Positions 18,601 through 54,825 of a stretch of 64,000 nucleotides of DNA are shown one piece after another. A program made the translations under genes and the position numbers. Location of the stretch: positions 37,262,001 to 37,326,000 of the forward strand of contig NC_079173.1 in assembly GCF_947568905.1 (NCBI RefSeq), read 5' to 3'. The notes under the pieces are model-generated. The model did no database searches and was not told the DNA's origin. It saw only the letters and a list, made by a program, of their open reading frames with translations. The DNA comes from Ostrea edulis (taxonomy: Eukaryota). The stretch's first letter is position 1, and every line of letters begins with the position of its first letter.

Positions 18601-18637
<37 letters not shown>

Positions 18638-30864: not shown

Positions 30865-30970
30865 AATATGAAAGGTGAAGATAACGAACAGTGATCAATC
30901 TCATAACTCCTAAAATCAATACAAAATAGATAGTTGGGCAAACACGGACCACTGGACACACCAGATCTGC
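30865..30970. mobile_element. Penelope-like retroelement 3' fragment; same family at 32470-32705 + 51129-51180, 41350-41605, 42285-42440, 54228-54600
   Basis: Shared GAAAGGTGAAGATAACGAACAGTGATCAATCTCATAACTCC..GTTGGGCAAACACGGAC; family assignment by recollection. Confidence 0.6.
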
Positions 30971-31564: not shown

Positions 31565-32240
31565 GGTCACGGTAGCTAAGTGGTAGAACATTCACTTCGC
31601 AACCGGGAGGTCGTGAGTTCGAGCCCCTCTTGTGCCATGGCCACGTCTAACCCATGATGTTAAAATAGGTAGTGATTGCTCATTCGCCAAACGCTCGGCA
31701 TTTAGAAGTCAGAATCACTGGTCTTTCGTATATCACCTTGGAAACGGATGTCCTGTGTCATGGTCACGGTAGCTAAGTGGTAGAACATTCACTTCGCAAC
31801 CGGGAGGTCGTGAGTTCGAGCCCCTCTTGTGCCATGGCCGCGTCTAACCCATGATGTTAAAATAGGTAGTGACTGCTCATTCGCAAAACGCTCGGCATTT
31901 AGAAGTCAGAACCACTGGTCTTTCGTATATCACCTTGGAAACGGATGTCCTGTGTCATGGTCACGGTAGCTAAGTGGTAGAACATTCACTTCGCAACCGG
32001 GAGGTCGTGAGTTCGAGTCCCTCTTGTGCCATGGCCGCGTCTAACCCATGACGTTAAAATAGGTAGTGATTGCTCATTCGCCAAACGTTCGGCATTTAGA
32101 AGTCAGAATCACTGGTCTTTCGTATATCACCTTGGAAACGGATGTCCTGTGTCATGGCAGGCGTTGGCACGATACAGACCCCCCCCCCCACCCCCCCACC
32201 CCCCCTTGCTACGACCCTGAGTGCTACGCATAGGTCTAAA
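31565..32240 (+). mobile_element. tRNA-derived SINE whose 5' 197 bp is tandemly triplicated
   Basis: Units start at 31565, 31762 and 31959, each with TAGCTAAGTGG A-box and GAGTTCGAG(C/T)CC B-box; a single 3' tail follows unit 3. Confidence 0.85.
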
Positions 32241-35084
32241 TAAAACTTAACTCGAAGTTTCGACTTAAAATTGTATCAACAAGTCCTGGCCTGATATACA
32301 AATTTTATATATAACACGAAACAAAAATATAATTCGATGACAATTGCTGCGAGTCTAATTTGCAACATAAATGCCAATTTTTAAAGTCAGTAGTAAACGG
32401 CAGTGGACTTGATGCTTTTACTAAATTGACCCATTCCTTTCCCACCTTCAGAAACGATGCTACGGGACTGTACATACATTCCCAGCATTTCATGATAGAG
32501 ATATGGTCGTTACAATGATCTAGATTGCCAATACAACCTATCATTGGATTAAATGCTGTCTGATGGCCGTTCTTTACACAATTACTGTGACTATGGTTTA
32601 TTCCGTTAACCTGATCAAGATATAGGGCTCAATGGCAAATGTAATCGGTCGACAGGGGATGTTTACTCCTCTTAGGCACCTGATCCCACTTTGATATATC
32701 TGCCCGGGTGTTGCTAAAACGCGGATCGAAAAACGGAACGGAAAATATTTTATGCAATAATGTTATGTTCCTCATAACATTATTGCATAAAATATTTTCC
32801 GTTCCGTTTTGTAAAATCAAAAGGCTTATTATGAACAAGGGAAGCAGAAATTACAAGAGAACAGGAAGTCATACTCAGAATCCACCATTTCGTATTAATG
32901 CCTCATTCTAATGCATTATTGTGAATTTAAAAACGGTGGATTTTGTGGGTGAATGTACCAGCAGACGCTTGCTTAATATTTGGCATAGTAAGTTTTAATA
33001 AAAATATTAAGCAAGCGCCTGTTGGTACCAGCCTTTTCCCCGGCTTTGTCACTCACACCCAACCCCCAGATTGTGACAGTATGTTGCTTCACAAATGAAA
33101 AAGAAAGATAAAGATGCTGAAAAAGACTTGAATTATAATAGAACCCTTTCAAATTATATTACTTTATTCTGGCTGCTAACTTAGAAAAGATTTTATAAGC
33201 CTACCCAATGAATAAAAGGTACACCCCCCCCCCCCCCCCCCGAAAATAACAGTGTAAAGATGAAATAATTTTTTGAACAATTTCCTCCAAACATAGCCTT
33301 TTTAATTTTTTAATTTAAATCGAACGTGATTTTAGTCGAACTAGAGTGTTTAAGATAACTGAATTTGAATTTAGTTCTACACGTACCTGGTACAGTATAC
33401 ATTTATGTATCACATCAAATTTAAAGCGAACGAGTTCATTGTAGAAAAAAGGTTTGTCTCATTTGGGATGATTCTATGTGAAAGTTCGTACATTTACCGA
33501 TATCCTGTGGATTAGTGTTGAAACTGAAGAGATGCATGTACAGGGGGATGGAAAGATTTAAACAGAACCATGAAAACTAGGGTGAAGTTTACTACCCATA
33601 GTAAGAGGAATCAACAGATTTATTTCATAATATATGAAATAGCTAAAAGGCTAACACAGAATGTATGGTTGAATGGAATTAAAAGTCATCTCATTATTAA
33701 TCTAAATGTTAAGATAATGATGCAAGTATTTAGTTTAGAAATGAACTGCCAGAAGTCCTCCTTATTTAGGATTGGAGTGCTGCGGTCACCAAGTCTCAGT
33801 TAAAAAAATTGATAAATCAAACACAAGATGTTTAACTTATTGACTTAATAAGATCAAAAGTTATCGTTGTTAGTAGTATAGTAAGCTGTATGGGGGGGGG
33901 GGGGGGGGGGGGGGGGTAAACAATAGACCTATTGTTCTCGAGAACAATAGAAGGGGTCATATTACAACCTTGACCTACTTAAGGACAATAGATGGATGAC
34001 GTCATAGGCTAAGAATAGCTGGAAAAAACCCATGTCTATTGTTATCGAGAACAATAGAAAGGGAGTGGAATCGAAGATCAAAGGGATAGTATAGGGGGGG
34101 GGGGGTAAACAATAGAGCTATTATTCTCAAATAACAAAGGACCCGAGTCTGAAAATTCCGAGTGAATAAGGGTATACGAGCGGGATCGAAGATCAAAGGG
34201 ATTGTATGGGGGGGGGGGGGGGTAAACAATAAAGCTATTGTTCTCAAATAATAAAGGACCCGAGTCTGGAAATTCCGAGTGAATAAGGGATACGGAAAAA
34301 CCTGACACGGTCTGTGTAAAATTCCGGTAACGTTAAACCAAAATCATGCGAGTAGTGTATTGGTAGAATTTCATTATGAATTTTAATCAGAATATGTAGT
34401 TCCATAACAAAGGATGCGAGTCTGGACTTTCCGAGTCAGTAAGGATATACGGAAAACCCTGACACGGTCATTGTAAAATTCAATGAGGTGTTGTTAAATT
34501 ATGCGAGTGGCGTATTTGCAATGGTAAACATAATTATGGTAAAACGATGAACGGAGTTACGATAAAGTGCATGCCATTGTTCACGGGATGACAAAAGCTT
34601 TCAATCCTGTAAAACGAATGCGTGCAGTGACACCGAGAAAATAATTTTATTCCTCGTTAGATCATCGATGGAGAGGGTCGTATCAGATAATCCAAGTGAC
34701 TCCGAGTGAAGAAACTTAACACTTATTTTACTTTAATGCATCGATGGATATACCTGTATCTAACAGAAAGTATTCTCATTCCGATGAACATAAGAAATAA
34801 AAAACAAGTACATTTTTTCATTAATTTTGTATTCAAGTTAAGGTATAAATAAAGTCCCATGCCGATTACACTCATGATTTGGATCTGAAAAGAAAAAGTT
34901 TTTATTTTCAAAATAATATTACTATGGAGTGACAAGTTTTTTTTTAATTGCATCTAATCAACGAAGAGATCCCACCTGTATTTATGAGATAAATTCAATC
35001 CAAGTGATTGCGAGTGAAGAAACTTTAAACTTATTTCACCTGTATGCATCATTGGATATACCTGTATTTTACAAAAGAAAACCC

Positions 35085-37500
35085 ATTTATTCATTCAATC
35101 TTTATTTCCCCCTTGCGGAGATTTCATGTTGTAACATTTACATATATTTAGAATACAGATAGATAGAAAATGATAACAAAGAAAACGTATGTACATGGAT
35201 AAATGTTTACATAACTACGCTTTTAGTTGTACTCTAAGTTTTGCGACAAGGCTCTATTATAGCACGCGGTGGCTCCACACACAAATTTTGCACAAAGACA
35301 AATAAATTATTTTTTGCTCTCTTTCTCTAATAATATTGTGGGTTCTACTCCTCCAAGTAATATAAAATATCTTCACTGAGCTGCGAAAGCTTTACATATA
35401 AATGGACATCGAAATTATTAATTAGGTTGTCAAAGAAAGATTCCCTTATGCAAGTTGTGGATGGACACCCCAACACAGCATGTTGATACTGGTTGTCGTA
35501 CGTCTCCTGACACACTCTGCAGGTTTGGCCTAAAGAAACAGGTGGAATGGTCCAGAGTTTAGCTAGGAATCTAATGAGTGGAACTTCATCGAATGAAAAG
35601 TCAAATTTCCAGAGTTTAATAGGAGAGATTATGTTGTGGAAATTTTTAAATATTCGGAAGTCTGGATCGGCTTCCATGCGATTTCTCCATTCCTCCGTAT
35701 GTTGGTGATGAATCGACTGTTTAACTATATATTTCCAATCTTTTTTTTCCAGGGAATTGATTAACTTCAACAAATGATTGTAAATATTGTAGTAAGTTGT
35801 ATTTGATTAAAATTTCGTATATATCTTTTAGAAATCCAGAAAATTGTTTGATGTCACCCTGTAAAAGATCATATAATCTAAATAAGAAAATGTTCTTTGA
35901 CAGAGAGTTAGTGTCAAGTTTACACAGCTTTCCAAAAAATGCTAATTTTCTTTTGTCTATTTCCGAAATGATGGGATGTAATCCAATCATGCTCTCACAC
36001 ATATCCGATCTTGTTGAAATTTTCATGCCTTGAATATCCTTTGTCACAAAATATTGAAATTTGTTTAAAATTTGGAAATCTGTTTGTTTTAGATTGTTCC
36101 ACAGTTCACATCCATACAATACGGTAGGTAATACTATTTCCCGGTAGAGTTTAACAAGAGTTAAAGGGTTTGTGTTATGAGACAAATCATTCCGTATTGT
36201 AAAGTAAGCCTTCCTGCCTTTGTTACAGCTGTCCGTTGTCCGGTCAATGGCTTTGAATCGAGAATGTTGAATAATACCCAAATGTTTGTAACTATCATTG
36301 ATCAAGATTTCATCATCACCTAATTTCCAAGTTTGCTGTGTTGGGGGTCTAACTATGCTAGACGTTTGAGCGTTAAAAGAAAAGCGCCATAAACATGAAT
36401 ACTTAAATGCAACGTTTAACATTTTTTGTAAGCTAGCTGGACTTGAACTTAAGCATGCAATGTCGTCAGCTAATGTCGGGTTTGTTGACTTTACATTGTA
36501 CACACCGAAATTACTGCTTACACTTTCTAAGCAATTCAATAAATCATTAAGGAAAACACAATATAAAAATCCAGACAATACACCGACTTGTCGAACACCT
36601 TGCTTAATTTCAAACCATTGAGACATGGTACCATTTACAGCCACTGTACTTTCATTACCGATATGACAGTCATCTATTATTTTCCATATCTTACCATTTA
36701 ACCCCAATTTATAAAGTTTTACCATGAGAGCTTTTCTCCAGACTGTGTCATAAGCTTTCTTACTATCTAAAAATGCAACATACACAGAACTACCGTGATC
36801 AATGTAATGACTTATTGTCTCTTGTAAATTAAAACTTGCGGTAATGCAACTCAGATCCTTCTGAAACCCTTGCTGCTGGGGATTCGGGAATCTAATTTCA
36901 CTAATTATTGCATCCGAAATTCTATTATGTAGTATTTTCTCAAATACCTTTAATGGGCATGACAATAAGGATACTGGTCGGTAACTATCAGGGGAGTTTT
37001 TAATCTTATTGTCTTCTTTGTATATAGGGACAATTATACCTTTTTTCCATTCAGTGGGAATCATTCCGCATTTGATGATTCCACAAAATAATTTGCATAG
37101 ATAAAAAGTGATTTTATGTCCACCATATTTTAGATGTTCCGCTTGGATACCATCAATACCCGGTGCTTTGCGCAATTTAAGGGAGTTAACAGCTTGGTTG
37201 ACCTCCGACTCGGAAATTTCATACTCGAGGCGTTTATCGCATTCGTTTTCAGATTTGATAATATCATACAATTTAGTGATGTTTTGCAAGTTTTCCTCGT
37301 CGTAGTTGCTGTTGTTTTTAGGAGCATATATAATTTCAAAGTATGTTGCAAATACATCAGCTACACTTTGAGGGGTATTTGCAGTTATACTACCGTACTC
37401 AATTTCCGGATATACCCTGCTTTACCAAATTTATTTCATTCAGTGAATGAAATTCCTCTCAAAGATGTATTTCTATCATGCACAAAATTTAATTAAATGA
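35085..37500 (-). mobile_element. 5'-truncated non-LTR retrotransposon (RT plus C-terminal Zn-finger-like region)
   Basis: RT ORF below; 3' end AAATAAAGATTGAATGAAT at ~35085-35105; no endonuclease domain seen upstream. Confidence 0.85.
35345..37289 (-). CDS. LINE reverse transcriptase, frameshifted in an A run near 35740
   Basis: KAPGIDG, YRPVSLLS, FLDSKKAYD, GVRQVGVLS, LADD motifs; C-terminal CRVC..H..GC in the second frame. Confidence 0.85.
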
Positions 37501-40500
37501 AGATTTTGCAAAAACCTATGACATCACATGAGGATCGATCAACCTTAATGGTATGAATAGTGAAAATCTGATTTACCATAGTTAAGATTTCCTTCATTAT
37601 CGTTCAAAGAATATACCTATATCCTTTGATTAACTTTTCAAATACTTTAAAATGTTGATTTACTATAATAAAACTGCGGTTGACTCTGGACAGTGAAATG
37701 TTGAAACGTTTGATTTGTTATAGCACATGTACAATTAGACAATGATTGACTATAGTTAAAACTTTGAGACTTGAGTTAGCTGTAGTTGAAAAATGATATC
37801 GTAATTAATTTTTATTTAATAAAAATTTAGAAATTTTGATTTCCAAGATTATAAAATCTTTGACGACAATTTTATTTCTACTGAAAACATTTGACCTTTG
37901 ATTAATGAAAGTAAGAACCTTAATTTTCTAGAGAAGAAATGGTTTGTGTAGAGAAAGTCTTGATTTAACTATAGCACAAAAAAAGATTTATCATCGTAAA
38001 AGTTTTGCGAATACTTGTAAAAACTAAGTTAACTACAACATACTGTACTGTAGATATATCGGATTAAAACTAGTAAACCTGCATTTCTCAAAGTAAGTTC
38101 ATGTACTTTGTTTGGTATCTTAAAATGTGTGTATACTGTCCCGAAAGTTTGATTTATTTTAGATAAACTTTGATAGTCTGATCTAATATACATCACAGTA
38201 AAATGCCGATGTTTTCGTAAAGAGTTTCTTTTCAAACTTTATTTAAAAAAAGAAGAAAATTATGTATAATAAAATGATATTTACGATGATCAAAATATTT
38301 AGATCAGTAAACACTTTGTTCAGTGTTGTAAAACTTTGATTCAACTTATATCATACAACTTTGATAGTTTGGTACTTTGATACAATGCTTCTTAAAAGAA
38401 CCTTGGTAAATTTCAACAGAAAATATCCATTATTGCTTACAAAATTAGGGGGGGAAACACTTTCAATCACTAAAAAGTTCATATGCGCGGGTATGTTAAG
38501 GCAGAGTATACCCCATTTACATATAAATTGCAAAGTCTTTGAAACCTGTTCTTGATAAAAGGAGTAAGCTACTTCACCTTTTAAAACTATTTTGAGTGTT
38601 TATGTGAGAACGTTTTGTATTCTAACAAGGTGACAAGTATGTGCCTCGGTATGATGTCATCACATGATTGTTGTAAATAAATTACGAAGGTACCTTGATA
38701 GAAGATGAATAAAAATACAACACAACCCCAGGCTTTAAACATCGATTTACCGTAAAAGATCAGAAGTTTCTCGAAAGTACTGCTAGAATCCTGCTTTCAG
38801 TAAGAAATAATAATAAAACATCTTAACACTATACCATCTCTGTTTCTTTTACCCCGATGATGTTTTCTTTGAAATATTTTCTAGCGGTAATTTCTGTGTA
38901 CGTTAGTTTCACTGATCGTTTTCTTCACCTTTATTACCTTTCACTCGGTGTATAAAAAGACTTTAAAAGTATGTGGCGCAGTGTTATACTTTTGCAGTTT
39001 TCTTTCGGTCAATGCTAAATGGAATATTTCTTCCATTGGACGCATTGTCACTGAATGAAATTAACACACCTTCGTCATGTTTATTGATTTTCAGTGTTTC
39101 ACGTATATATCCCGTTACATATATCTTAAATACTCCATATTTTGTCAATATATGCATGACACAATGAACATTAGTGTTTACGTGCTTCATCGTCACTTGA
39201 TTGATTGTTTGTGTATTGTTTGATGTATAGTTATGACATAACCATTTTGATTTTATATTAATCAGACGTAGGTTACATGAAGGAAATAAAACATCCTCCG
39301 CTATTCCTTCGATCGCTAAATGGTTTATTTACAAGAACATAAAATTCGAATTAGACCGAGATATACATATACTTTGTGATATGCTTATTGCTATTATGAC
39401 ATCACATTGTCCATTTCCACCCATCCGAGTTTTTTAATGACTTGCCTTAACGTATCCGCGTAAAACAAATGACGACGGGAGCTATGAACTACTTGATATT
39501 TTATACACGTTCGTCTTCCCTTTGTTTTTGTCTAAACTTTTCCATAATGTAAACAATGCAAAGCTGAGGTACTCTCGTGTAAACTGATTTACTATAGTAA
39601 AAGCAAACGTTGATTTACCATAGTGAAAAGACGAAGTGCAGTTCTTGCTTGTTTGGAATATATGATATTGATTAAATTAAATTCTGCATCTTAGGCTATG
39701 GAACTGGTCTTTGTTTCGTTTATTATAACGGGATGCATTTTCATGTTGATTTGGAATACTATCACTTAAATAGTTCGGGGCGCTACCATTGTAATTTTTG
39801 AACATGACAGTCAACTTTACACATTGTAGTCAATTTTGCGATATAAGTCCACTTTGTAAAGTTTACCAGCCTGTTTCTGAACAAAGGAATTCTCTAGATG
39901 CAAAAATAGAAAGACCAGTAACAACTCTACCTGCAGATATTTGTACCTTTTCACTCTTGCCAGTATCGTAAACAGCCACCCCAAACAATTGAAGCATATT
40001 TAAGAGTAGGTCTAATAAATGCTATGTACATTTTGACAGATGTTTTCTACCAATTTTGAATTTGAGCTTTTTTTAAAAGCCCTATTTTGAAGAACTTTGT
40101 TTACTATGAAATCAATGCCAACTGAGGTTATATGATAATGATAAACCCAAATGACGATGGACCGGAACACACTTCCGTACCTTTCTTTGAAAGATAAACA
40201 ACTTTAGTATTGGATGGATTGAAGTTGAGTAACCACTTATCTGCCTGTTTCGAATACATGTAAACCATGGTTAATCTTAAAATCAATATCCAAAATATTA
40301 TATGAGGATTGCTGAAGTGAATTATCATCAGCACATAGTCTACACTTACATCAACACCATTAACATAGATTAAAAACAGTAAAGGTCCTAAGACAGAACT
40401 TTGAGTTACACCAGCAAATATATCAAATTTTGACAATAAAAGGTGTATACATATTACTTTTTGTGATCTGTGGCATGAGTAACTTTTAAACCACTATGAA

Positions 40501-42967
40501 TTATTGCCAGATACACCATAAGTTTGTAATTTAAAAATATTCTATCAAGTGCTTTTGAAAGGTCACAGGATATCATACCATGATTTTTTTTCTTCGTCAA
40601 TACGGTGTACGATACTACAACTCGCATGATACGTTTCTAATAATTCATAAACGGTAAAATATCCTGGTCAGAATTCGGCTTCATATCGATGAAATAAATC
40701 ATTACTATGAAAATAATTTTGTACATGTTTTGAAAACGATTATCTCCATAATTTTACTAATGCATGATAACAGCAAGACATGTCTATAATTAGATACTAT
40801 CGATGGGTCTTCCTTTACAAAAAGAGCAATGACATGAACAATATTCCTAAAAGATAGGAACATATCTTCTGACAATGTCCTATTGAAAAGCATAGAAGGA
40901 ACGGTGCATTTAGTTGATTTCAACATCTCATGACTATTACAATCTGGGTCAGAAGCTTTATTGACTACAAGTATTGTAATGATATCTACTAATTCTTGTT
41001 CGTCAATAAAAATGTTACTTAGAGAGCCACTAATTAAACTGTACGTATTTGGTAGTGTTTCGTTGGTGTCATCATTTGTGGAAATGGACGAGAAGCACGC
41101 ATTCAAAACTTCCATTTAGTCAATATCAGAATACATTGTTATCATCAATATGTATTGGATATATTTCATTTGATAATTTCATATCAAATGAGTTTTTCAT
41201 CAACCTTCAATGTAACTCACTGTTGCCTTCCTTTGCTTGAATTCGTCTAAGTAGGTTTCAATACTATCGTAATAATTGAATATCGCATGGTATTTCCATA
41301 TTATTAACCAAAATGCGAAATTTTCTATAAGAGTCGTCTTTCGTTTATAACGAAAAGGTGAAGATAACGACCAGTGATCAATTTCATAACTTCCATCAGG
41401 AATATAAAATTAAGAGTTGGGCACGCACGTACGACCCCACCCCCACCCCCACCCACCTGGATACACCAGTGGATGGTATCAGGTGCCGAGGAGGAGTAAG
41501 CATCTCTCTTCGACCGATTACACCCACCGTGAACCCTATCTCTTGATCAGGTAAACAGAGTAACCCGTAATCAAAATCAGTAATAATGCTTTGTTGCAAA
41601 GTCGATTTCTCATTCTGATGGGTTTTTTCACAATGTATCATCGAGTCATGCCATGGATTTTCTCGCGGACAAACTGTTATGGTTTGTTTAGGTACACATT
41701 CACGAACTCTTGAAAGATTTTCGGATCTGACATTTTCTGTTGCCAATTCTAAAGTATCTGCTCCGTTGATGATGTTCACCCAATTACAATTTTCGATTGA
41801 TAAAGTCATTGATTTTCATAAACACATACTGTACGGTGTATGCGCGATTGTAATTTATATTCGAAATAAGCGAGATAATCGCTAATCGAGGATTCTATTC
41901 TCAACCGCTTCACACGATTGAATGTCTGTAGAGTTCAGTATTGGGTTTAGCAGTACTCGATTCCGTGTAGCGTCAGTTATATTGTTTACTAAATTGTGTA
42001 TGGAAACAATTTCACGGACATTGTGTGATAGTGGAGCATTAAGGAAATGTACATTTAAATCGTCTTCTATGTTTATTTTGTCAGATTATATGCAAACTTT
42101 ATCTAAACTCCATGAAAGTTTGATCCAAAAAGGGCTGTCGAAACTCGGAGGTCTGTAGACACGGCAAAGATCATAATTACAGGTGCAGTTTTCTATTTTA
42201 ATCCATATACATTCAAGATCGGCGGACTCAAATTCTGGGCGTCTTATAGCGCGTATTTAATTTGACATATACAGCAAGACATAGAGCTCACGGCGGGTGT
42301 GACCGGTCGACAGGGGATGCTTACTCCTCCTAGGCACCTGATCACACCGCTGGTATGTCCCAGGGTCCGTGTTTGCCCGACTCTTTATTTTGTATTCCTT
42401 GCGGGAGTTACGATTTCCATCACTGATCGTTATCTTCGCCTATCATAACACCGCCTACAAAACAATTTCTGTATTCACAGATTATATCATTAAAGTCATC
42501 AATAAGTAAGCTATCGTTGCTCACGGAATTATCTAGATGGATTTCAGTAAAACATAAAATATCGAAGACATGAACAAGAACATTTAAATGACCTGATTGG
42601 TGTCTAATGCTTATGATATTCATATGCAAAATGTCAAGGACATTTTCAATAGTACGACCCGGATTCATTTCTATATCGCTGCCAACTAACAAAAGGAAAT
42701 GTGAAACAAAAAATGAAAGTAAGACTTGATAAATACAGATTTAAGCTTAATGAATTTCACACAGTGAGTGTAATGTATTTGAATAATCCGGATATTGTCA
42801 GGTTGACCATACGTGTTCTATTTTTAGTGTTATGTTTTAGAACGGAATAAAAACGAGTTGATATCACGGCATGGCTATATGTTGGTGTTTGGACTAGGTG
42901 TCCGTTATATTAATGTCTGTAGAAGACATTTCATGGTGTCAGAAGAAAACTTTGACGTACCAAAACA

Positions 42968-45886
42968 ATGGATCAGTTAAAACCGCCGTCGCACTTAAGT
43001 TTTGAAGGGAATTCAGCTGAAAATTGGAAAGAGTGGCTGCAAGGATTTCGCCTATATTTGGTAGCCTCGGGGATCGACGAAAAGGCGGGAAAAGTGAAGG
43101 TTGCTACCTTTTTACATGTTGCTGGTGTCGAAGCGAGACGTATTTACAACACATTCAACATTCCTGAGGAGGATGCTGAAAAACTAGAGGTAGTGTTCAA
43201 AAACTTTCAAGACTACGTTGAACCACGTAAGAACTTAACGTATGTACGCCATTTATTTTTCACACGAAATCAAGAAAGTCATGAAACAATCGATAATTAT
43301 GTCACTGACTTAAAAAACAAAGCCATACAATGCGAGTTTGGTGATTTGAAAGACTCGTTGATTAAAGACAGGATAGTGTGTGGTATTTCGAGTGAAGCAT
43401 GCAGAGCCAGGCTACTACGGGAAGCAGATTTATCATTAACTAAGTGTTTAGACATTTGCCGTGCTTCTGAAGTTTCCGAACAGCAATTGAAAAGTTTACA
43501 CAAAGAACCATCAACTGCTGTAGCTGTTCATGTTGTAACTAGAAAACCTGAAAAACTACAGAACCGCGGTAGTACCAGAAAACAAACAGCTCACGTTCAC
43601 TCAAACACTAACAAACTGAATGCGTGTAGTAAGTGTGGAAAACAACATGAGAAAGGGAAATGTTTTGCGTACAACAAGAATTGTTACAAATGCAAAGGCC
43701 GTAACCATTTTGCAAAATACTGTAATAAGACACCAAAATCTGTGCATTACGTGGAAGAGGAATCACATGACCTATACTTGGGCATAGTGAATGTGGACAC
43801 TATTCAGGAAGAGGTACCATGGACTGAGACAGTGAACATTAACAAAGTACCGGTTACATTCAAGCTGGACACAGGAGCTCAGGCGAATATAATACCAAGG
43901 AATGTGTTCAAAGAACTACACATCTCTCCGAAGCATTTACGAAAAGTAAAAGTGAACCTGTACACTTACAATGGTGAAGTCATGAACCCAGATGGGAAGA
44001 TTGATATCAGATGCCGAATCCGTAAAGTGGAACGTACACTTCCGTTTTACATCACTGCAAAAGGAAGTACACCGATACTTGGCAAAGAATCATGTGCACG
44101 CCTAGGATTAATCCAACACATACCAGCAGATTCCATAGAAAGTGCGGATGTTTGTGTAACAAAGGACAAACTACTGCAACAGTATCAGGATGTTTTCAGT
44201 GGACTAGGACATCTACCAGGAAAATATCACATTGAAATTGATCCGAATTCAACGCCAGTGATACACCCACCAAGGAAAGTGCCGGCAGCGTTACACAGTT
44301 CTGTACGTGATGAACTTCAACGCATGGAAAAATTGGGCGTGATCGCAAAACAGGATGGTCCTACGGATTGGGTTCACAGTATGGTAACAGTACGGAAACC
44401 AGGGAAAATTCGTATATGCTTGGATCCAAAAGACTTGAATCCGCACATAAAGCGAGAACATTACCACTTAGTAACTGTGGAGGAAATCATTGAACGACTA
44501 CCAAATGCTAAAGTGTTCTCAAGATTTGATGCTACGCATGGTTTTTGGCATATTGAACTAGACGAAGCAAGTTCAAAGGCACTCACTTTTAACACACCAT
44601 TTGGTAGATACCGATATCTACGACTTCCGTTTGGAAAAACTTCAGCGTCAGAAGTGTTCTCGAAACGATTACAGGAGTTTTTTAAAGACTTACCTGGTGT
44701 TGAGTGTCTAGTAGACGATATCCTTGTTCATGGAGAAAACGTCTCGGAGCATGATGAAAATCTCGTTCGTATGCTGGAGCGATGTCGTCAAATTGGGCTC
44801 AAGCTCAATAAGGATAAAGTAGAACTCAGAGTACCTGAAGTGAAATACGTTGGTCACGTCATAGGGAGAGATGGACTCAAGGTTGATCCGGAAAAGGTTC
44901 GTGCTATTGTAAACATGCCAGAACCGACAGATGTTCAAAGTGTGCGCCGATTTCTTGGACTAGTGCAATATGTGTCGAAATTCATACCAAACCTAGCAGA
45001 GATTTCTGAACCTCTCCGATTGCTTACGAAAAGTGACGTTTTGTGGCACTGGGACAAACAGCAAATTGACAGTTTTGCGAAACTAAAAAACTTATTAACG
45101 CAAGCACCAGTTCTTCGCATTTATGATCTTCAAAAGGAAGTCACCATTTCTGTGGATGCAAGTTCCAAAGGATTGGGTGCAGTATTATTGCAGAACGGAC
45201 AGCCCGTCGCATACGCTTCACGAGCACTGACAGAGACTCAGCAGAGGTATGCACAGATAGAACGAGAGATGCTCGCAGTTATCTATGGATGTGAAAAATT
45301 TCACCACTACATCCATGGACGTTCAGTTACCATAGAAACAGATCACAAACCTTTGCTAGCGATTCATCGCAAACCACTATATCAAGCTACTCATAGACTA
45401 CAGAGGATGCTTATGCGTTTACAACGTTACGACGTTACTTTAGAATACGTTCCGGGAAAGGAAATGTTCATTTCCGATGCGTTAAGCAGGGCTTACTTAC
45501 AAGAGTGTACAGAATCACTGGTTGATGAGGACATAGACATCAATTTCATTGAGCAGGAGCTTCCTATGACGGAAGGAAAACTTCAGGAGCTGAAGGACGC
45601 AACTGAGTCTGATGAACAGTTTCAGGCATTGGCCGACATAGTGCGACTGGGATGGCCAGAATCTCGGGTACAAGTTCCAGCAGATATAAGAATATTTTGG
45701 AACTACAGAGATGAAATAACAGTTCTAAATGGTTTACTGTACAAGGGGCCAGCAGTGATGATTCCCAAGTTACTACGTCACCAAATGTTGAGGAAGTTAC
45801 ATGAACCTCACCTGGGTATAGTCAAAACCAAGCAGAGAGCCAGAAATATCATATTTTGGCCAAACATGAACTATGACTTAGAGTAG
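42968..45886 (+). CDS. Gypsy Gag-Pol: Gag, Zn-knuckle region, protease, RT, RNase H
   Basis: 972-aa ORF; CYKCKGRNHFAKYC, LDTGA, LVDDI, DASSKGLG, TDHKPL; ends at an in-frame TAG inside the integrase Zn finger. Confidence 0.95.
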   Translation: MDQLKPPSHLSFEGNSAENWKEWLQGFRLYLVASGIDEKAGKVKVATFLHVAGVEARRIYNTFNIPEEDAEKLEVVFKNFQDYVEPRKNLTYVRHLFFTRNQESHETIDNYVTDLKNKAIQCEFGDLKDSLIKDRIVCGISSEACRARLLREADLSLTKCLDICRASEVSEQQLKSLHKEPSTAVAVHVVTRKPEKLQNRGSTRKQTAHVHSNTNKLNACSKCGKQHEKGKCFAYNKNCYKCKGRNHFAKYCNKTPKSVHYVEEESHDLYLGIVNVDTIQEEVPWTETVNINKVPVTFKLDTGAQANIIPRNVFKELHISPKHLRKVKVNLYTYNGEVMNPDGKIDIRCRIRKVERTLPFYITAKGSTPILGKESCARLGLIQHIPADSIESADVCVTKDKLLQQYQDVFSGLGHLPGKYHIEIDPNSTPVIHPPRKVPAALHSSVRDELQRMEKLGVIAKQDGPTDWVHSMVTVRKPGKIRICLDPKDLNPHIKREHYHLVTVEEIIERLPNAKVFSRFDATHGFWHIELDEASSKALTFNTPFGRYRYLRLPFGKTSASEVFSKRLQEFFKDLPGVECLVDDILVHGENVSEHDENLVRMLERCRQIGLKLNKDKVELRVPEVKYVGHVIGRDGLKVDPEKVRAIVNMPEPTDVQSVRRFLGLVQYVSKFIPNLAEISEPLRLLTKSDVLWHWDKQQIDSFAKLKNLLTQAPVLRIYDLQKEVTISVDASSKGLGAVLLQNGQPVAYASRALTETQQRYAQIEREMLAVIYGCEKFHHYIHGRSVTIETDHKPLLAIHRKPLYQATHRLQRMLMRLQRYDVTLEYVPGKEMFISDALSRAYLQECTESLVDEDIDINFIEQELPMTEGKLQELKDATESDEQFQALADIVRLGWPESRVQVPADIRIFWNYRDEITVLNGLLYKGPAVMIPKLLRHQMLRKLHEPHLGIVKTKQRARNIIFWPNMNYDLE

Positions 45887-46686
45887 TTGATTAAGTCGTG
45901 TGGAGTGTGCAACTCATTTCGCAAATCAAACACAAAGCAATCACTCATACCTCATGAGATACCCTCTACTCCTTGGACCAAAGTTGGAGCTGATATATTT
46001 CATTTCAAGGGCAAAGACTATGTGTTGTTTGTGGACTATTACTCGAAATATTCAGAGATTATACCTCTACCAAATTTGAGAGCATGTTCCACTATTGCTG
46101 CGTGCAAAACAGTGTTTTCAAGACAAGGCATACCCTTAGAGCTATTCTCGGACAACGGACCACAATTCAGTTGTCATGAATTCAAACAGTTTGCATCTGA
46201 ATGGGAGTTCACGCACAAAACCTCCAGTCCCCACTATCCACGTTCAAATGGTCAAGCGGAACGCTGTATTCAAACCGTAAAAAAAACTTACTGAAAAAGG
46301 CAGAAGAGAGTAATGGTGACCCAAATATTGCTCTTCTGGAATACAGAAACTCGCCTATTGATGGAGTTGACCTGTCGCCTGCACAGTTATTAATGAACAG
46401 GACTCTTCGTTCAAAACTACCAACAACCAAAGTGTGGTTGGAACCAAATTCACTGACGTCTCCACAATCCAAACTTCAACTTAGGCAGATGAAACAGAAA
46501 TATTTCCATGACCGAAAGTGTGCAAAATTAACGCATGTTGAGGATAAAGAAGTTATCCGTATACAGAATCCAGACAATCGTCAGTGGGAACCAGCTGTAG
46601 TTCAAAAGGACTTCGGAAACCGTTCGTACAACGTTTTAAATCAGCAAGGGAACACAGTAAGAAGAAACAGGAGTCAGATAATTTGA
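45887..46686 (+). CDS. Gypsy integrase remainder (frameshift in an A run at ~46279-46286)
   Basis: CGVC, ADIF, SDNGPQF, SNGQAERCIQ, then LLEYRNSP and RRNR in the next frame. Confidence 0.9.
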
Positions 46687-48646
46687 AAATAAGTGGCTGT
46701 AATCATTGAAAATGTTTACTGCTAAAGGTTTAACTACTAGTACATGTATTTCTAAAGATTTGAAATATATTAATTTGGTCTCATGACAAAATGCACATGA
46801 GCTTGGAATATAAGTATTAAGCGAAAGGGTATGAAAGAAAAAAACCAAACAAAAACACAAATAGTACAACAGATCAAATGAGTACGTCCTGTACTACCAT
46901 GGTAGTAATGCAATTTAAGATTATAAAGCAAATGAATGCATGCAGATAACTGGAAAGCAATTGCAAATAGTCATATAATAACGCGAGTCAGGTGAGTATG
47001 CACACAACTCTTCAAGAAATAATATTTGAATGATGCAAGTAAATTTGAACGGAGGATCAATAGATAAAGGGTAGTAGGACAGTGCGTACAAGAGAGTTGA
47101 GTTTCCTCATTCATCAAATGTGTTGAGGAAAAGATATGCATGGCGATGGAAAGAAAAAGAAGCATATATACAGAATAAAGAGTGCATGCATGTAAATGAT
47201 TGTATACAGGCGGTTGAAGTGAACAAGAAACTGCATGAGGGATATAATCAAATAAACAATTTTTGACATAATAAAGTTCAAAGTAAGTAATGTTCAGAAC
47301 AGTTTAAATGATGACATCTTAAGGAATATTTCCAACAAAGGGTCAGGTACGGCTCAGGGTAGATAACATGCACTTTGTCAGATTTGTCACGTTCACGGAT
47401 TTTATCGTTAGTTGATCAGGTGGGGATGTTTAGTAAGGTCCTCGTTAAAGAAGACAGTCCTCGATTCGCGTTTGTTTTTCAACTTGCTATAACTTTTCAC
47501 CAAGCGGAAACTTTACGTCGACACTTTGAAGCCTGGTTATGAACTGACGTAGACCTGCATTACGCTTGTTCGGATCATCGACTTTGTGTGAGTTTATGAT
47601 TTCGTCTGGGTGTAACTCTTCTTTCCTGTTATGTTCAGGATAAGTGAGGCAGTATCCTCGCCCTGCTCTTCAGCTACTACCGTGGCGCGAACTCTGACCA
47701 CACTGTTCCATCTCGTCAATTTGTTGGAACAGTTTATAGTTTTCCGTTTCTACATGTTGATGAATCTTCTCCTTCAAGGGTTGAAACACCAAAGTTTACT
47801 TCGATCGACACAAGTGTCGATGTGTCGTTGTGCAGCGACTGCTTTACAGATGTCGCTATTCTAAGGACGTCCTCATCCGATATAACTACCTGGCGAGAAG
47901 TAAATATGTATTTAGTGTTGCTTGCTGGCCAAAGGTTGGGTTTTCATACGGTATACTTGAGAAACGGGGTAGATTCATCAGCAGGAATGATAGGGAGTTG
48001 CACGACAACGTTGTCAGCATTTTTATCCATTGGTGGACAGTGTGGGCTTGGTTTTTCTCTCTGTGTGTTCTGTAGGGGTCCGTACAACGTCTGAGAATGA
48101 TCGCAATAAATCACTCAAAATCCTTTTGTTTTTTGTTGTTGTTATCACCCATGATGTTAGTACATGTTGAAGTTAGATTAAAATCTTTCTTCAAGTTTAC
48201 AAATACTTTAGGTACCTCTACTGGAGAATCGAAGGTCCTGTATCTGTCAGCATCGTTTCATCTCCTGAGCCCCACGATAAAAATGAATAAATGTATGGAC
48301 AAAACAAAGAAATTGTGTTTTCATGGATACCCGGTTCATCGAAGGACCCCGGAGGGCTCCCGCGGAGTCTAAAGGTTTCCGGAACCCCTGCCATCTGGAG
48401 TCTAAATATTTCCGGATCCCTGGCATCCGGTGTTCGAAGGTTTCCGTTGACATTTGATTCCGGAGTCGGAAGGTTCCGGAAACTTCATAGAGCCGATCGA
48501 TTGATTAAAAAAAAATATATCAGGTATTGTTGATAAACATGCATTGGAAAAACATTTTGAAAGATTCATTGTGTGTATTATTCCTAGAAACAAAAATGCT
48601 GGGAAAATCCAATGACGTCATTAGAGAACCTATATTGTGGGTCAAC

Positions 48647-50713
48647 TTCGCAAAACTTTTACGATGATAAATCTTTTTTTGTGCTATAGTTAAATCAAAA
48701 CTTTCTCTACACAAACCATTTCTTCTCTAGAAAATTAAGGTTCTTACTTTCATTAATCAAAGGTCGAATGTTTTCAATAGAAATAGAATTGTCGTCAAAG
48801 ATTTTATAATCTTGGAAATCAAAATTTCTAAATTTTTTATTAAATAAAATTAATTACGATATCATTTTTCAACTACAGCTAACTCAAGTCTCAAAGTTTT
48901 AACTATAGTCAATCATTGTCTAATTGTACATGTGCTATAACAAATCAAACGTTTCAACATTTCACTGTCCAGAGTCAACCGCAGTTTTATTATAGTAAAT
49001 CAACATTTTAAAGTATTTGAAAAGTTAATCAAAGGATATAGGTATATTCTTTGAACGATAATGAAGGAAATCTTAACTATGGTAAATCAGATTTTCACTA
49101 TTCATACCATTAAGGTTGATCGATCCTCATGTGATGTCATAGGTTTTTGCAAAATCTTCATTTAATTAAATTTTGTGCATGATAGAAATATATCTTTGAG
49201 AGGAATTTTATTCACTGAATAAAATAAATTTGGTAAAGCAGGGTATATCCAGAAATTGAGTACGGTAGTATAATTGCAAATACCCCTCAAAGTGTAGCTG
49301 ATGTATTTGCAACATACTATGAAATTATATATGCTCCTAAAAACAACAGCAACTACGACGAGGAAAACTTGCAAAACATCACTAAATTATATGATATCAT
49401 CAAATCTGAAAACGAATGCGATAAACGCCTCGAGTACGAAATTTCCGAGTCGGAGGTAAACCAAGCTGTTAACTCCCTTGAATTGCGCAAAGCACCGGGT
49501 ATTTCTTTTTATTAGCGGAGAATCTTTTTGTAAAATACAGGTATATCCAATGATGCATAAAGGTGAAATAAGTTTCAGGTTTCTTCACTCGCAGTCACTT
49601 GGATTGAATTTATCTCATAAATACAGGTGGAATCTCTTTGTTGATTAGATGCAATTAAAAAAAACTTGTCACTCCATAGTAATATTATTTTGAAAATAAA
49701 AACTTTTTCTTTTCAGATCCAAATCATGAGTGTAATCGGCATGGGGCTTTATTTATATCTTAACTTGAATACAAAATTAATGAAAAAATGTACTTGGTTT
49801 TTTTTATTTCTTATGTTCATCGGAATGAGAATATTTTCTGTTAGATACAGGTATATCCATCGATGCATTAAAGTAAAATAAGTGTCAAGTTTCTTCACTC
49901 GGAGTCACTTGGATTATCTGATACGACCCTCTCCATCGATGATCTAACGAGGAATAAAATTATTTTCTCGGTGTCACTGCACGCATTCGTTTTACAGGAT
50001 TGAAAGCTTTTGTCATCCCGTGAACAATGGCATGCACTTTATTGTAACTCCGTTCATCGTTTTACCATAATTATGTTTACCATTGCAAATACGCCACTCG
50101 CATAATTTAACAACACCTCATTGAATTTTACAATGACCGTGTCAGGTTTTTCCGTATATCCTTATTGACTCGGAAAGTCCAGACTCGCATCCTTTGTTAT
50201 GGAACTACATATTCTGATTAAAATTCATAATGAAATTCTACCAATACACTACTCGCATGATTTTGGTTTAACGTTACCGGAATTTTACACAGACCGTGTC
50301 AGGTTTTTCCGTATCCCTTATTCACTCGGAATTTCCAGACTCGGGTCCTTTGTTATTTGAGAACAATAGCTTTATTGTTTACCCCCCTATACAATCCCTT
50401 TGATCTTCGATCCCGCTCGTATACCCTTATTCACTCGGAATTTCCAGATTCGGGTCCTTTGTTATTTAAGAATAATAGCTCTTTTGTTTACCCCCCCCCC
50501 CCATACTATCCCTTTGATCTTCGATCCCACTCCCTTTCTATTGTTCTCGATACCAATAGACATGGGTTTTTCCAGCTATTTTTAGCCTATGACGTCATCC
50601 ATCTATTGTCCTTAAGTAGGTCAAGGTTGTAATATGACCCCTTCTATTGTTCTCGAGAACAATAGGTCTATTGTTACCCCCCCCCCCCCCCCCATACAGC
50701 CTACTATACTACT
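48647..50713 (-). repeat. Right inverted arm (2.07 kb; lacks ~2.08 kb of the LINE)
   Basis: Reverse-complement match to the left arm, roughly 97% in segments compared by eye; LINE breaks off after ..AAAGCACCGGGT at 49500. Confidence 0.9.
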
Positions 50714-52276
50714 GTTGTTTTATACATATCACACTCCCTGTTGTAAGCACACACATACACAGTATTTTGTGTAAATACATGTACATGTGCGTTAATGACG
50801 TTTTGCCACAGGGGCATACAAACCACATGTATTCTTTTCATTCTCTACCCAAAGGTGTGACTGCTCACTAACACCTCTGTCAATGCCGAAATTTCAAAAT
50901 TTTTGTAAAAGGCTTTGTAAATTCTTATACAAACGTTTAACTTAATTCGCTTAATCAATTTATGATGCAAAATTTAAAGATAAAGTTGTTTTATAGCTTG
51001 TATACAATTCCCAAAGTGTTGATTTTAATCAAAATGATTGATTTCCCCCCGATTTTTTGGCATTATCTCATCTACATTAATCATTCTAATTTTTTAATTC
51101 CGTTCCGTTCCGTGTTTTAGCGACACCCTGTTTGCCCAACTCTATTTTGTATTGCTTATAGGAGTTATGCAATTGATATATTTTCTCCCTCAGTGCCATC
51201 GTCCGAAAATAAATATTTTCTCGACTATTTGATAATAAAACAAAACAGAAAAAGTGAATAGGTTGGTTGCGTTCGTTACAAGATCGCTTTTAATAAGCAA
51301 ACATCAAATCAACAAAGCTGAAAAATCATTAATTCAAAACTGAAAATGGGCTGGGTGGGAGGGAAGGCTAAGGCACAGAAATACAAAAGTTACCTTTGTT
51401 GCTTGTAACGAACCTCGCACTGCCCGAACACTGACCAGTAGTAGTATATATACTGGGCTCGTGCATGAGTTCAAAAACCCGCGAAATGTATTTACGGAAA
51501 ATAACGAAAACTGACGAAATGTAAAACGTAAAGAAATAAATTATTGTTCGTTATCTTCATCTTTCATATATTTAATACTTGTGTTATGTTTTGTTTAGAC
51601 TGAATATATTTGGAACTGTAAAAGAGACAGTGTGCCTTTTCGGTTTTATTTTATCATTGAGTAAATAACCGGGGAACTCATAGGGAAAATACATGTGAAT
51701 ATTGTCACCAGAAGTCACCAAAATTAGTACAAATTTGCTTCTTTTTTTTAAATAACACTCAGAGGTTTGCTATGGGATATGTAGATACGGTTCATTCTAA
51801 GATTGGTTTGTGTGTGTATGCGCGTGCAAGATGGCGAGTATTACGTATTTTGTTTTTCTTACTATTGTTCAGAAACTATTTATGATGGCATTATGAAACT
51901 TGTACAATGATAAACTATAGTCCGTAGATCTCACAGGAAGTAATATAGGATTAAAGAATCTTTTTGACGAATTTATCAATGTGTAAACTCTGACATTTTA
52001 CTAGGGAAATCTTTTAAAAACCCTCTGAAAAACAGCAGGGCTGGTGATTCGTGTGAGCATTGTGTCCCATGACCTTGTTGTGTATATAACTTGAAATGTT
52101 CTTTCATTTTTAAACCCTGAAAAATGAAATGTAAGCATTACAGAACTAGTATATTCTACAATACATTTAGACATACAGTTGTAAATTCATAGAATGATTC
52201 AGATTTGTTAGCATGATAACCCCAAAGTCATGATGGGAAAATCAAACTTCACATAACAACCTCTTATTTCTTACAG

Positions 52277-52438
52277 TGTTAATGGTCAAAACTCATGATT
52301 TGAGAGATCCACCTTCCAAACAGGAGAAAACATGGATAGAGAACAAAATAACTTCGTATTGGAATGGAACTTCTCTGTGAAAGTGCTGGATCCTATTTTA
52401 CACCGAAGGTTGCAGGGATTGCATGCTTGAGATAAGAG
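52277..52438 (+). other. Candidate 162-nt phase 1-1 exon with one in-frame TGA and a CxxC motif
   Basis: CTTATTTCTTACAG acceptor, GAG|GTAATT donor; LMVKTHDLRDPPSKQEKTWIENKITSYWNGTSL*KCWILFYTEGCRDCMLEIR; no partner exons identified. Confidence 0.35.
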
Positions 52439-54051: not shown

Positions 54052-54825
54052 CGTCACGCCCACTTCTTAAGCATTTTCTGACTCGCAGACAAGACTGAAA
54101 AAATTCAAACTACAATGAAAGAATATACTTGTTATATAGACACGGTGATATTGAGCTCTCTGTTGTAATAAGTGATGTGAAAGGTTTTGTATTTTGATTT
54201 TCATTTTGTTTAAAACATATAATCTAAATGAAAGGTGAAGATAACCAACAGTGATCAATCTCATAATTCCCATAAGCAATACAAAATAGATAGTTGGGCA
54301 AACACGGACCCCTGGACACACCTGAGGTGGGATCAGGTGCCTAGGAGGAGTAAACATCCCCTGTCGACCGGTCACAACCGCCATGAGTCCTATATCTTGA
54401 TCAGGTAAACGGAGTAATCCATAATCAAAAGCAGTGTGCCATGAACGGCCTAACACTAAGTATGAAACAGGTTAGACAGCATTTGACCCAATGATAGGTT
54501 GTATTTGCAAACTAGATCGTTATAACGACCATAGAATTTGTGAAATGTTGACTTTAATCGAGACTGTTGAAACCCCAGTAACATCAACTTGTTTGTCAAT
54601 AGACTGCCTCACATATTTTTACTCAGAACCCCTTTGCATTTAATTTAGTAATTTCCGAAGACATTTGGCGGCAAATTATGCCCTTCATGAATTATGCTGG
54701 TATAAACTGTTAATTAATGCTTACCTCGATTTACAAATGTGCATGTATTTTCAACTATGTCCAGTCATGTTTAAAACATGACTGGACATAGTTATCAATA
54801 TCTGAGAGCAATTTAGTTCATACTT

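What the first reader, a model, noticed from the sequence alone, without database searches (positions are those of the whole stretch)
33872..50713. Gene-less Polinton/Maverick-like giant element carrying retroelement cargo
Seen: both termini read AGTAGTATAGTA(A/G)GCTGTATGG inward, a perfect 6-bp TSD GTTGTT flanks them, the inverted arms are 4.1 and 2.1 kb, and the total length is 16,842 bp. In the 10.6-kb core I can recognise only a decayed CR1-like LINE, a Gypsy, Penelope-like pieces and ~2.5 kb of unassigned sequence, with no protein-primed polymerase, integrase, ATPase, protease or capsid ORF. Established: 5'-AG/AGT-repeat termini, long TIRs and 6-bp TSDs characterise Polintons, which are typically about 15-20 kb. 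Inference: a non-autonomous satellite of a Polinton, with unusually long TIRs (~1.7 kb without the LINE), whose virus-like length is made up of foreign cargo. It could be replicated, integrated and perhaps packaged in trans, acting as a vehicle for retroelements.
Basis: partly seen in the sequence, partly recalled or inferred. Interest (0 to 1): 0.85.

Follow-up and report, generated by a model that had tools for sequence, protein, structure and literature searches.

The report
Gene-less Maverick-type transposon shell in oyster
A 16.8-kb insertion in the flat oyster genome has the ends and target-site footprint of a Maverick/Polinton virus-like transposon but none of its genes; it is a non-autonomous shell filled with ordinary retroelement debris, and nothing here shows that it ferries or packages that debris.

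Summary
An element of 16,842 bp (33872-50713) begins and ends with AGTAGT...ACTACT. It is flanked by a perfect GTTGTT duplication and has inverted arms of 4,140 and 2,067 bp.

These ends, plus a 6-bp duplication, are the published hallmark of Mavericks/Polintons. No polymerase, ATPase, protease or capsid relic was found. The only integrase belongs to a nested Gypsy.

A 5'-truncated LINE lies in both arms at the same junction. The arms were therefore copied onto each other after the LINE landed, and the right arm later lost about 2.08 kb.

The core holds an old, heavily decayed LINE, an old inverted pair of short repeats, a young 3'-truncated Gypsy and about 3.5 kb of unassigned DNA. Penelope-like pieces were not confirmed.

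The Gypsy looks younger than the arms' last identity, so the present "virus-like" length is probably accidental.

The host is Ostrea edulis. No other copy or autonomous partner could be examined, so trans-mobilisation, cargo transport and packaging remain untested. Maverick-type elements carrying LINE or Gypsy inserts have already been reported.

Verdict: a real, non-autonomous Maverick-type derivative, a variant of a known kind, of moderate interest.

The parts
33866..33871 (.). Left copy of the 6-bp target-site duplication (GTTGTT)
   Evidence: Read directly.
33872..35076 (+). Left arm, outer block. It starts with the AGTAGT end motif. It holds three reiterations of the terminal unit (period about 117 bp), each with a G-run (33892-33916, 34094-34105, 34208-34222), and two palindromic motifs at 33929-33950 and 34036-34063.
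   Evidence: Pairs with 50713-49526 at 1.94% substitutions. The palindromes pair in the ssDNA fold, z = -5.95.
35077..37503 (-). LINE-1: a 5'-truncated non-LTR retrotransposon inside the left arm. It has RT and the C-terminal region but no endonuclease domain. Broken by one frame change; no stops inside the matched stretches. The 5' limit is approximate, set by a 10/11 candidate duplication at 35066-35076 and 37504-37514.
   Evidence: RVT_1 E = 1e-23. 129 bivalve LINE relatives. Protein homology has outer bounds 35354-37421 and starts at about residue 420 of 880-908-aa relatives. Break counts. Candidate TSD read.
37515..38011 (+). Left arm, inner non-LINE block: the presumed inner part of the original TIR of about 1.7 kb.
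   Evidence: Pairs with 49143-48647, 4 substitutions in 496. No protein homology.
38012..39568 (.). Unassigned core DNA, left (1.56 kb).
   Evidence: No Pfam hit on stop-free pieces. No repeat partner in the window.
39569..41130 (-). LINE-2: an old, heavily decayed non-LTR RT relic. It has 9-12 stops inside the matched stretches, 2-3 frames and about 25% identity to relatives.
   Evidence: tblastn with 36 LINE proteins, best E = 8e-19. Counts.
41351..42447 (.). Inverted pair of a short dispersed repeat (arms 41351-41581 and 42275-42447, 70-84% complementary) enclosing about 0.7 kb. Other copies of the repeat lie at 30867-30965, 32502-32689, 51129-51177 and 54228-54533.
42448..42967 (.). 520 bp upstream of the Gypsy ORF. 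It may hold the Gypsy 5' LTR and leader; this was not tested.
   Evidence: No partner repeat in the element. Sequence read.
42968..46683 (+). Gypsy gag-pol (protease, RT, RNase H, integrase), a young copy. It covers residues 1-1238 of intact 1,318-aa relatives at about 99% identity. Broken by one in-frame stop, one frame change and a 3' truncation (about 80 codons and the 3' LTR missing).
   Evidence: Pfam. Cluster of O. edulis proteins. Outer bounds and counts. 10 private changes in 1,231 codons. No LTR pair.
46684..48646 (.). Unassigned core DNA, right (1.96 kb). It includes stop-free pieces on the + strand (longest 148 codons), a 32-bp tandem repeat at 48363-48446, and a stretch (47552-48482) that recurs at 95.5% identity in a 918-bp contig of sequencing run ERR13868503.
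48647..49143 (-). Right arm, inner non-LINE block.
49155..49503 (+). Right-arm remnant of LINE-1: the same 5' part as in the left arm, at the same junction. The rest (about 2.08 kb) is missing.
   Evidence: LINE protein homology at 49237-49503. Pairs with 37503-37155.
49504..49525 (.). 22 bp with no counterpart, standing where the left arm has 2,078 bp (35077-37154).
   Evidence: Unique in the window. No significant match in the missing stretch.
49526..50713 (-). Right arm, outer block, ending in ACTACT on the + strand.
50714..50719 (.). Right copy of the 6-bp target-site duplication (GTTGTT).
   Evidence: Read directly.

Best explanation
This is a structurally non-autonomous, gene-less derivative of a Maverick/Polinton element in Ostrea edulis (record OX387713.1, about 37.30 Mb).

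Shown:
- One integration event joined both ends to the chromosome in the way a Maverick-type integrase does: a 6-bp duplication and (AGT)2//(ACT)2 ends.
- No Maverick gene survives.
- A 5'-truncated LINE sits in both arms at the same junction. The left copy is the fuller one, with a reading frame continuous across the point where the right copy breaks off.

Inferred history:
1. An element with TIRs of about 1.7 kb took a LINE into one arm.
2. The arms were then made alike. This happened either by copying one end from the other during a protein-primed replication cycle supplied by a helper (the panhandle-type homology restoration proposed for adenovirus and PRD1), or by in-place gene conversion between the inverted arms.
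3. The right arm then lost about 2.08 kb.
4. A Gypsy inserted into the core and was truncated at its 3' side.

The old relics in the core (LINE-2 and the inverted repeat pair) are far more decayed than the arms are diverged. Most likely they were already inside the element when the arms were last identical, which suggests host or TE DNA trapped between two Maverick ends.

The element can only move if an autonomous Maverick with matching ends supplies polymerase and integrase. Whether it ever moved in this gene-less form is not shown.
For: - Ends and TSD.
- Published signature: (AGT)2//(ACT)2 plus perfect 6-bp TSD; intact elements 12.7-24.6 kb; TIRs 46-1,447 bp (PMC8097293). TIRs of about 2 kb in butterfly polintons.
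- Arms.
- No Polinton family in any stop-free piece. The longest unexplained piece has no relatives of known kind among 1.84 billion representatives or 5.8 billion clusters.
- LINE in both arms.
- Substitution levels are equal in the outer (1.94%) and inner (1.75%) arm blocks.
- LINE-2 is heavily decayed.
- The Gypsy is young.
- Mavericks occur in all molluscs studied (PMC10294476). Bivalves are the richest hosts of Orthopolintovirales-like regions.
- Panhandle homology-restoring model: PMC11886824.
Against: - Only one copy was seen. No autonomous partner, second copy or empty site could be examined.
- Membership rests on cis features alone (ends, TSD, TIR).
- Decayed relics shorter than 45 codons, or Maverick proteins without a Pfam model (some capsid and accessory proteins), could have been missed.
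- The dating is rough: 10 against 38 events, with different site classes.
- If arm-to-arm gene conversion is ongoing, arm identity says nothing about the age of integration. The old core relics could then have arrived in place.
- The LINE's own duplication is only 10/11 and was picked by eye.
Confidence: 0.6

Rival explanations
1. A dead autonomous Maverick. A full, gene-bearing element integrated long ago. Its genes were then removed in place by deletions and overwritten by TE insertions, while arm-to-arm gene conversion kept the inverted arms nearly identical and spread the LINE from one arm to the other. It never moved as a gene-less unit.
For: - Most Mavericks in genomes are degraded (PMC8097293).
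- The core holds very old relics beside young arms, which gene conversion would explain.
- The LINE has homologous arm sequence on both sides (1.2 kb and 0.5 kb), enough for conversion.
- The Gypsy truncation and the right-arm loss show that large deletions did occur here.
Against: - Not one Maverick gene relic remains in 10.6 kb, although both arms and the duplication are intact.
- The duplication is 6/6 and the 22-nt termini differ at only one base, which fits a young event better.
- Losing 12 kb or more of genes without touching either arm needs well-placed deletions.
Confidence: 0.25
2. One reading: a satellite whose virus-like length is made up by cargo so that it can be replicated, integrated and packaged by a helper Maverick, thus carrying retroelements between sites or hosts.
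For: - The length of 16,842 bp lies at the mean of intact vertebrate Mavericks (16,862 +/- 1,678 bp).
- Without the Gypsy and with the full LINE in both arms, the length would still be about 15 kb, within the published range.
- polB-less polintons with LINE or Gypsy inserts stayed mobile in butterflies.
- The LINE predates the arms' last identity.
Against: - This is a single copy, and the published size range is broad (12.7-24.6 kb).
- The Gypsy probably arrived after the arms were last identical, so the exact match in length is accidental.
- Nothing in the sequence bears on packaging.
- The butterfly cases keep capsid and packaging genes; this element has none.
Confidence: 0.1
3. A long-TIR element of another DNA-transposon superfamily (foldback-like, Ginger2-like or another family that makes 6-bp duplications), whose ends resemble Maverick ends by chance.
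For: - Long, internally repetitive TIRs recall Galileo/Foldback elements (abstract).
- No Maverick protein ties the element to that family.
Against: - Galileo makes 7-bp duplications.
- Ginger2 has TGTNR ends and an RTATAY target.
- An exact (AGT)2//(ACT)2 motif has a prior of about 1 in 4,096 and coincides with a 6-bp duplication.
Confidence: 0.05

Closest known systems
Maverick/Polinton elements with (AGT)2//(ACT)2 ends (vertebrate Mavericks; Barreat and Katzourakis 2021, PMC8097293)
   Same: Same end motif, perfect 6-bp target-site duplication, TIRs, and a total length within 12.7-24.6 kb.
   Different: No pPolB, integrase, ATPase, protease or capsid genes. Arms of 2.1 and 4.1 kb (about 1.7 kb before the LINE), against 46-1,447 bp. 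The host is a bivalve.
polB-less polinton-related insertions with LINE (Daphne) or Gypsy inserts in Pieris butterflies (preprint 10.1101/2025.02.07.637071)
   Same: Maverick-type ends and TIRs of about 2 kb; LINE and Gypsy sequence inside; loss of the polymerase, and so dependence on a helper.
   Different: The butterfly elements keep capsid, packaging and other genes, exist as several near-identical copies and are polymorphic, which shows recent movement. Here all genes are gone and only one copy was seen.
Non-autonomous derivatives of large elements in general (internally deleted DNA transposons; large retrotransposon derivatives, cited in PMC6431247)
   Same: The cis-acting ends are kept and the coding interior is replaced by unrelated DNA, so movement is possible only in trans.
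   Different: Those families are defined by many copies sharing one interior. That could not be examined here.
Homology restoration of inverted terminal repeats in protein-primed replicons (panhandle model for adenovirus and PRD1; PMC11886824)
   Same: It would explain how a LINE that landed in one arm came to lie in both arms with equal divergence.
   Different: This is a resemblance in how it works, not membership. The model itself lacks direct evidence, and chromosomal gene conversion gives the same result.
Galileo/Foldback-type long-TIR elements (PMC3573991)
   Same: [quoted passage not shown]
   Different: 7-bp duplications, P-type transposase and different ends.

Membership tests
Maverick/Polinton | 6-bp target-site duplication | tested here: met
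   GTTGTT at 33866-33871 and 50714-50719. Criterion from PMC8097293 and PMC3014272.
Maverick/Polinton | Conserved end motif 5'-(AGT)2//(ACT)2-3' or (AG)3//(CT)3 | tested here: met
   AGTAGT at 33872-33877 and its complement at 50708-50713. Motif as published in PMC8097293.
Maverick/Polinton | Terminal inverted repeats of tens to about 1,500 bp (about 2 kb in some insects) | tested here: met
   Arms pair over 2,041 aligned sites at about 98%. At about 1.7 kb before the LINE, they are longer than the vertebrate range and similar to the butterfly cases.
Maverick/Polinton | [quoted passage not shown] | tested here: not met
   No DNA_pol_B-type hit anywhere. The only rve/Integrase_H2C2 hits are contiguous with the Gypsy RT-RNase H. 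It is therefore filed as a non-autonomous derivative, not as a Polinton in the strict sense.
Maverick/Polinton | Morphogenesis module (major and minor capsid proteins, packaging ATPase, adenain-like protease) | tested here: not met
   No such Pfam family in 102 pieces of at least 45 codons or in targeted pieces. Some capsid proteins may lack Pfam models, so very decayed relics cannot be ruled out.
Maverick/Polinton (non-autonomous family) | Several copies with the same ends and own duplications, and an autonomous partner sharing the termini | not tested
   No second copy in the window. TIR reading frames are absent from the protein collections. Searches of public DNA for the termini were left out and referred.
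Ginger2/Tdd | TGTNR termini and an AT-rich RTATAY 6-bp target | tested here: not met
   Ends are AGTAGT and the target is GTTGTT. Criteria from PMC2836005.
Galileo/Foldback (P superfamily) | 7-bp target-site duplication | tested here: not met
   The duplication is 6 bp; the seventh bases differ. Criterion from PMC3573991.
Gypsy LTR retrotransposon (nested part) | Protease-RT-RNase H-integrase polyprotein | tested here: met
   Pfam hits in that order. About 99% identity to 1,318-aa O. edulis relatives.
Gypsy LTR retrotransposon (nested part) | A pair of long terminal repeats | tested here: not met
   No direct repeat in 38000-48700. The copy ends about 80 codons short of its relatives, so the 3' LTR is lost.
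Non-LTR (LINE) retrotransposon, endonuclease type (arm copy) | RT domain with family-typical flanks; AP-type endonuclease; target duplication | tested here: inconclusive
   RT met. The endonuclease is absent because the copy starts at about residue 420 of its relatives. The candidate duplication is only 10/11. The clade ('CR1-like') was not tested.
Penelope-like elements | Penelope-type RT with GIY-YIG endonuclease; hammerhead motifs in the repeats | tested here: not met
   No RT or GIY-YIG hit outside the Gypsy and the two LINEs. No Rfam family at gathering score in 30000-55000.

The most novel reading that the evidence does not exclude
The element is a true gene-less satellite of an oyster Maverick. 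It went through at least one helper-driven, protein-primed replication and integration cycle after taking up a LINE, and the LINE copied into both arms is the footprint of end-to-end homology restoration. It thereby moved about 10 kb of foreign DNA as passenger. That would make it the first fully gene-less 'mini-chromosome' of a Maverick, and a natural record of how such replicons mend their ends.
Probability: 0.2. Interest if true: 0.65.

Novelty: new variant of a known kind. Interest (0 to 1): 0.42.

Why it matters
Mavericks/Polintons lie on the border between transposons and viruses and are unusually abundant in bivalves. Little open literature describes their non-autonomous derivatives.

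A copy that keeps perfect ends and a perfect duplication but no genes defines the minimal cis-acting parts of the family. These are the end motif, the reiterated terminal unit with G-runs, and the palindromic motifs.

The LINE present in both arms shows that the two ends exchange sequence. If other copies share the same interior, that would show that such shells move host and TE DNA around. If not, this is one more decayed insertion.

Either way, annotation pipelines that call Mavericks by their genes will miss elements of this kind.

Tried and rejected
- Pfam on 102 stop-free pieces, then on ten targeted pieces at E up to 10, gave only chance-level hits.
- Word-indexed and full HMMER searches with the longest unexplained piece (148 codons) gave one 84%-identical fragment of unknown kind and two weak repetitive matches.
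- A search with a TIR reading frame, meant as a proxy for a copy census, found nothing. Exact look-up of nine short ORFs from the arms and core found none in the collection.
- An LTR search by two methods found none.
- A search for a paralogous empty site, using the flanks, found only fragments of a dispersed short repeat.
- The G-run matches elsewhere in the window (3924-3951, 15907-15938, 18597-18635) have unrelated flanks and are not further termini.
- The 22 bp that replace the missing LINE part have no significant source in the missing stretch.
- Rfam and tRNA scans found nothing in the element.
- Kapitonov and Jurka 2006 could not be read because it is not held. What I say about non-autonomous Polintons in Repbase is therefore from memory only, and I do not rely on it.
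- The run accession of the related contig is not mentioned in any held paper.
- I rejected the reading that the left arm merely took a LINE insertion: LINE protein homology is also present in the right arm.
- I rejected an assembly artefact: the arms are diverged and unequal.
Full report
**1. Observation**

The 22-nt terminal string occurs exactly twice in the window, at 33872-33893 (+) and 50692-50713 (-). None is expected by chance, and the two copies differ at one base. GTTGTT abuts both ends, at 33866-33871 and 50714-50719.

The element is 16,842 bp long. The arms pair in two blocks:
- 33872-35076 with 50713-49526;
- 37155-38011 with 49503-48647.

A global alignment gives 23 substitutions in 1,185 sites (1.94%) for the outer block and 15 in 856 (1.75%) for the inner block. 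Between the blocks the left arm has 2,078 bp (35077-37154) where the right arm has 22 unrelated bp (49504-49525).

An assembly artefact is unlikely, because the arms are diverged, unequal in length and enclose a unique core.

**2. Host**

The large Gypsy ORF is found letter for letter in NCBI. It lies on record OX387713.1 of assembly GCA_947568905.1 (48,989,042 bp), at about 37.305 Mb. The other members of its 90% cluster are Ostrea edulis proteins. The LINE relatives are from oysters, pearl oysters and mussels. The window is therefore flat-oyster chromosome DNA.

**3. The ends**

The element begins with AGTAGT and ends with ACTACT. PMC8097293 reports that 5'-(AGT)2//(ACT)2-3' is the commonest end motif of vertebrate Mavericks. 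It is found together with perfect 6-bp duplications and was used there as the mining criterion. In that study intact elements measure 12.7-24.6 kb (mean 16,862 bp) and TIRs 46-1,447 bp. TIRs of about 2 kb occur in butterfly polintons.

Mavericks are present in all molluscs studied, and bivalves hold the most Orthopolintovirales-like regions of any lineage surveyed.

Other families fail on tested features:
- Ginger2 has TGTNR ends and an RTATAY target.
- Galileo makes 7-bp duplications.

Inside each arm the terminal unit is reiterated. The period is about 117 bp, with three G-runs per arm. Two palindromic motifs, at 33929-33950 and 34036-34063, pair in a single-strand fold (z = -5.95). I take these for protein-binding sites. 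That is inference.

**4. No Maverick genes**

- Pfam on the ten largest ORFs found only retroelement domains.
- Pfam on 102 stop-free pieces of at least 45 codons from the arms and the core found nine unrelated families, one member each, the best at E = 5e-4 before correction for 102 tests.
- Ten targeted pieces at E up to 10 gave nothing.
- The longest unexplained piece (148 codons, near the right arm) has one 84%-identical fragment of unknown kind as its only real relative, among 5.8 billion clusters and 1.84 billion representatives.
- The rest of the window has no large ORFs other than those in tandem repeats and a further LINE.

"Gene-less" therefore stands, within the reach of these tools. 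The only integrase is contiguous with the Gypsy RT-RNase H.

**5. The LINE is in both arms**

The longest open piece of the arm LINE aligns from its first residue to about residue 420 of 880-908-aa relatives that carry an endonuclease domain. LINE protein homology has outer bounds 35354-37421 on the minus strand. It reappears at 49237-49503 on the plus strand, that is, in the right arm.

The reading frame is continuous across 37155, the point where the right arm's copy breaks off. A LINE copy that keeps its 5' part but lacks its 3' end cannot arise by insertion. The left arm therefore shows the older state, and the right arm has lost about 2.08 kb.

The LINE part and the non-LINE parts of the arms show the same order of divergence. 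The arms were therefore last identical after the LINE had landed: one arm was copied onto the other.

Two mechanisms fit, and the sequence cannot separate them:
- homology restoration between the ends of a protein-primed linear replicon, as in the panhandle model for adenovirus and PRD1, which itself lacks direct proof;
- chromosomal gene conversion between inverted repeats, for which 1.2 kb and 0.5 kb of homology flank the LINE.

**6. The core**

- 38012-39568: unassigned.
- 39569-41130 (-): a second LINE relic with about 25% identity to relatives, 9-12 stops inside the matched stretches and 2-3 frames. It is old.
- 41351-42447: an inverted pair of a short dispersed repeat, with arms 70-84% alike. 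It is also old. Other copies lie at 30867, 32502, 51129 and 54228.
- 42968-46683 (+): Gypsy gag-pol, covering residues 1-1238 of 1,318 at about 99% identity. It has one in-frame stop, one frame change and no 3' end, and there is no LTR pair.
- 46684-48646: unassigned. The stretch 47552-48482 recurs at 95.5% in a 918-bp contig from run ERR13868503, so at least that stretch is repeated somewhere.
- Penelope-like pieces were not found.

**7. Relative ages**

Against three intact relatives that agree with one another, the Gypsy copy has 10 private changes in 1,231 codons. That is roughly 0.36% per non-synonymous site if it has been drifting since insertion. The arms differ by 1.9%, or about 0.95% per arm.

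The counts are small (10 and 38 events) and the site classes differ. Even so, the Gypsy probably came after the arms were last identical. Without the Gypsy, and with the full LINE in both arms, the element would have measured about 15 kb. The close match of today's length to the vertebrate mean is therefore accidental, although 15 kb still lies within the broad published range.

The old LINE-2 and the repeat pair are far more decayed than the arms are diverged. Either they were already inside when the arms were last identical, which would make them carried DNA, for instance host DNA trapped between two Maverick ends. Or the arms have been kept alike by conversion in an old insertion.

**8. Verdict**

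The element is a real Maverick-type insertion that is non-autonomous in structure. It fails the gene-content definition of a Polinton, so I file it as a derivative, not as a member in the strict sense.

It works like any non-autonomous element. Its ends would have to be recognised by the polymerase, terminal protein and integrase of a helper. That is inference, and whether it ever moved in this form is not shown.

TE-bearing, polB-less polintons that stayed mobile are already described.

Noticed in passing
window 52243-54000: Large minisatellite with a 52-bp unit, more than 34 copies at 98-100% identity and strong G over C skew (+0.53). Its ORFs of up to 541 codons are artefacts of the repeat.
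   Followed up: no
window 7689-8128, 9201-10009, 10924-12356, 17976-18435, 20203-20873, 22081-22446, 31565-32157: Seven further tandem arrays, with units of 55, 30, 30-32, 26, 40, 39 and 197 bp. The window is unusually rich in minisatellites.
   Followed up: no
window 3924-3951, 15907-15938, 18597-18635 (and three per arm of the element): Homopolymer G/C runs of 25-38 bases with unrelated flanks. Their lengths may be unreliable in the assembly.
   Followed up: partly
window 30867-30965, 32502-32689, 41351-41581, 42275-42447, 51129-51177, 54228-54533: A short dispersed repeat family, with copies 80-93% alike, that occurs singly and as an inverted pair. It may be a SINE or a MITE. There was no tRNA or Rfam match.
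   Followed up: partly
window 62865-63998 (-): A further LINE RT ORF of a different family from the two in the element. It runs off the end of the window.
   Followed up: partly
window 59599-59995 and 60526-60911: Two direct repeats of about 390 bp, 93-98% alike and 927 bp apart. Each ends in a GC-rich hairpin-like stretch after a T-run. This is either a tandem duplication or the ends of a small element.
   Followed up: no
window 21141-21221: ARAGORN calls an 81-nt tRNA-Cys with anticodon ACA inside a repeat-rich stretch. It is probably a pseudo-tRNA or a SINE head.
   Followed up: no
L001:1-918 (Logan, run ERR13868503) vs window 47552-48482: A 918-bp contig from another sequencing run matches the unassigned right part of the core at 95.5% over its whole length. 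The organism of that run is unknown to me.
   Followed up: partly
window 8100-8299: A run of 200 N, left as it is.
   Followed up: no
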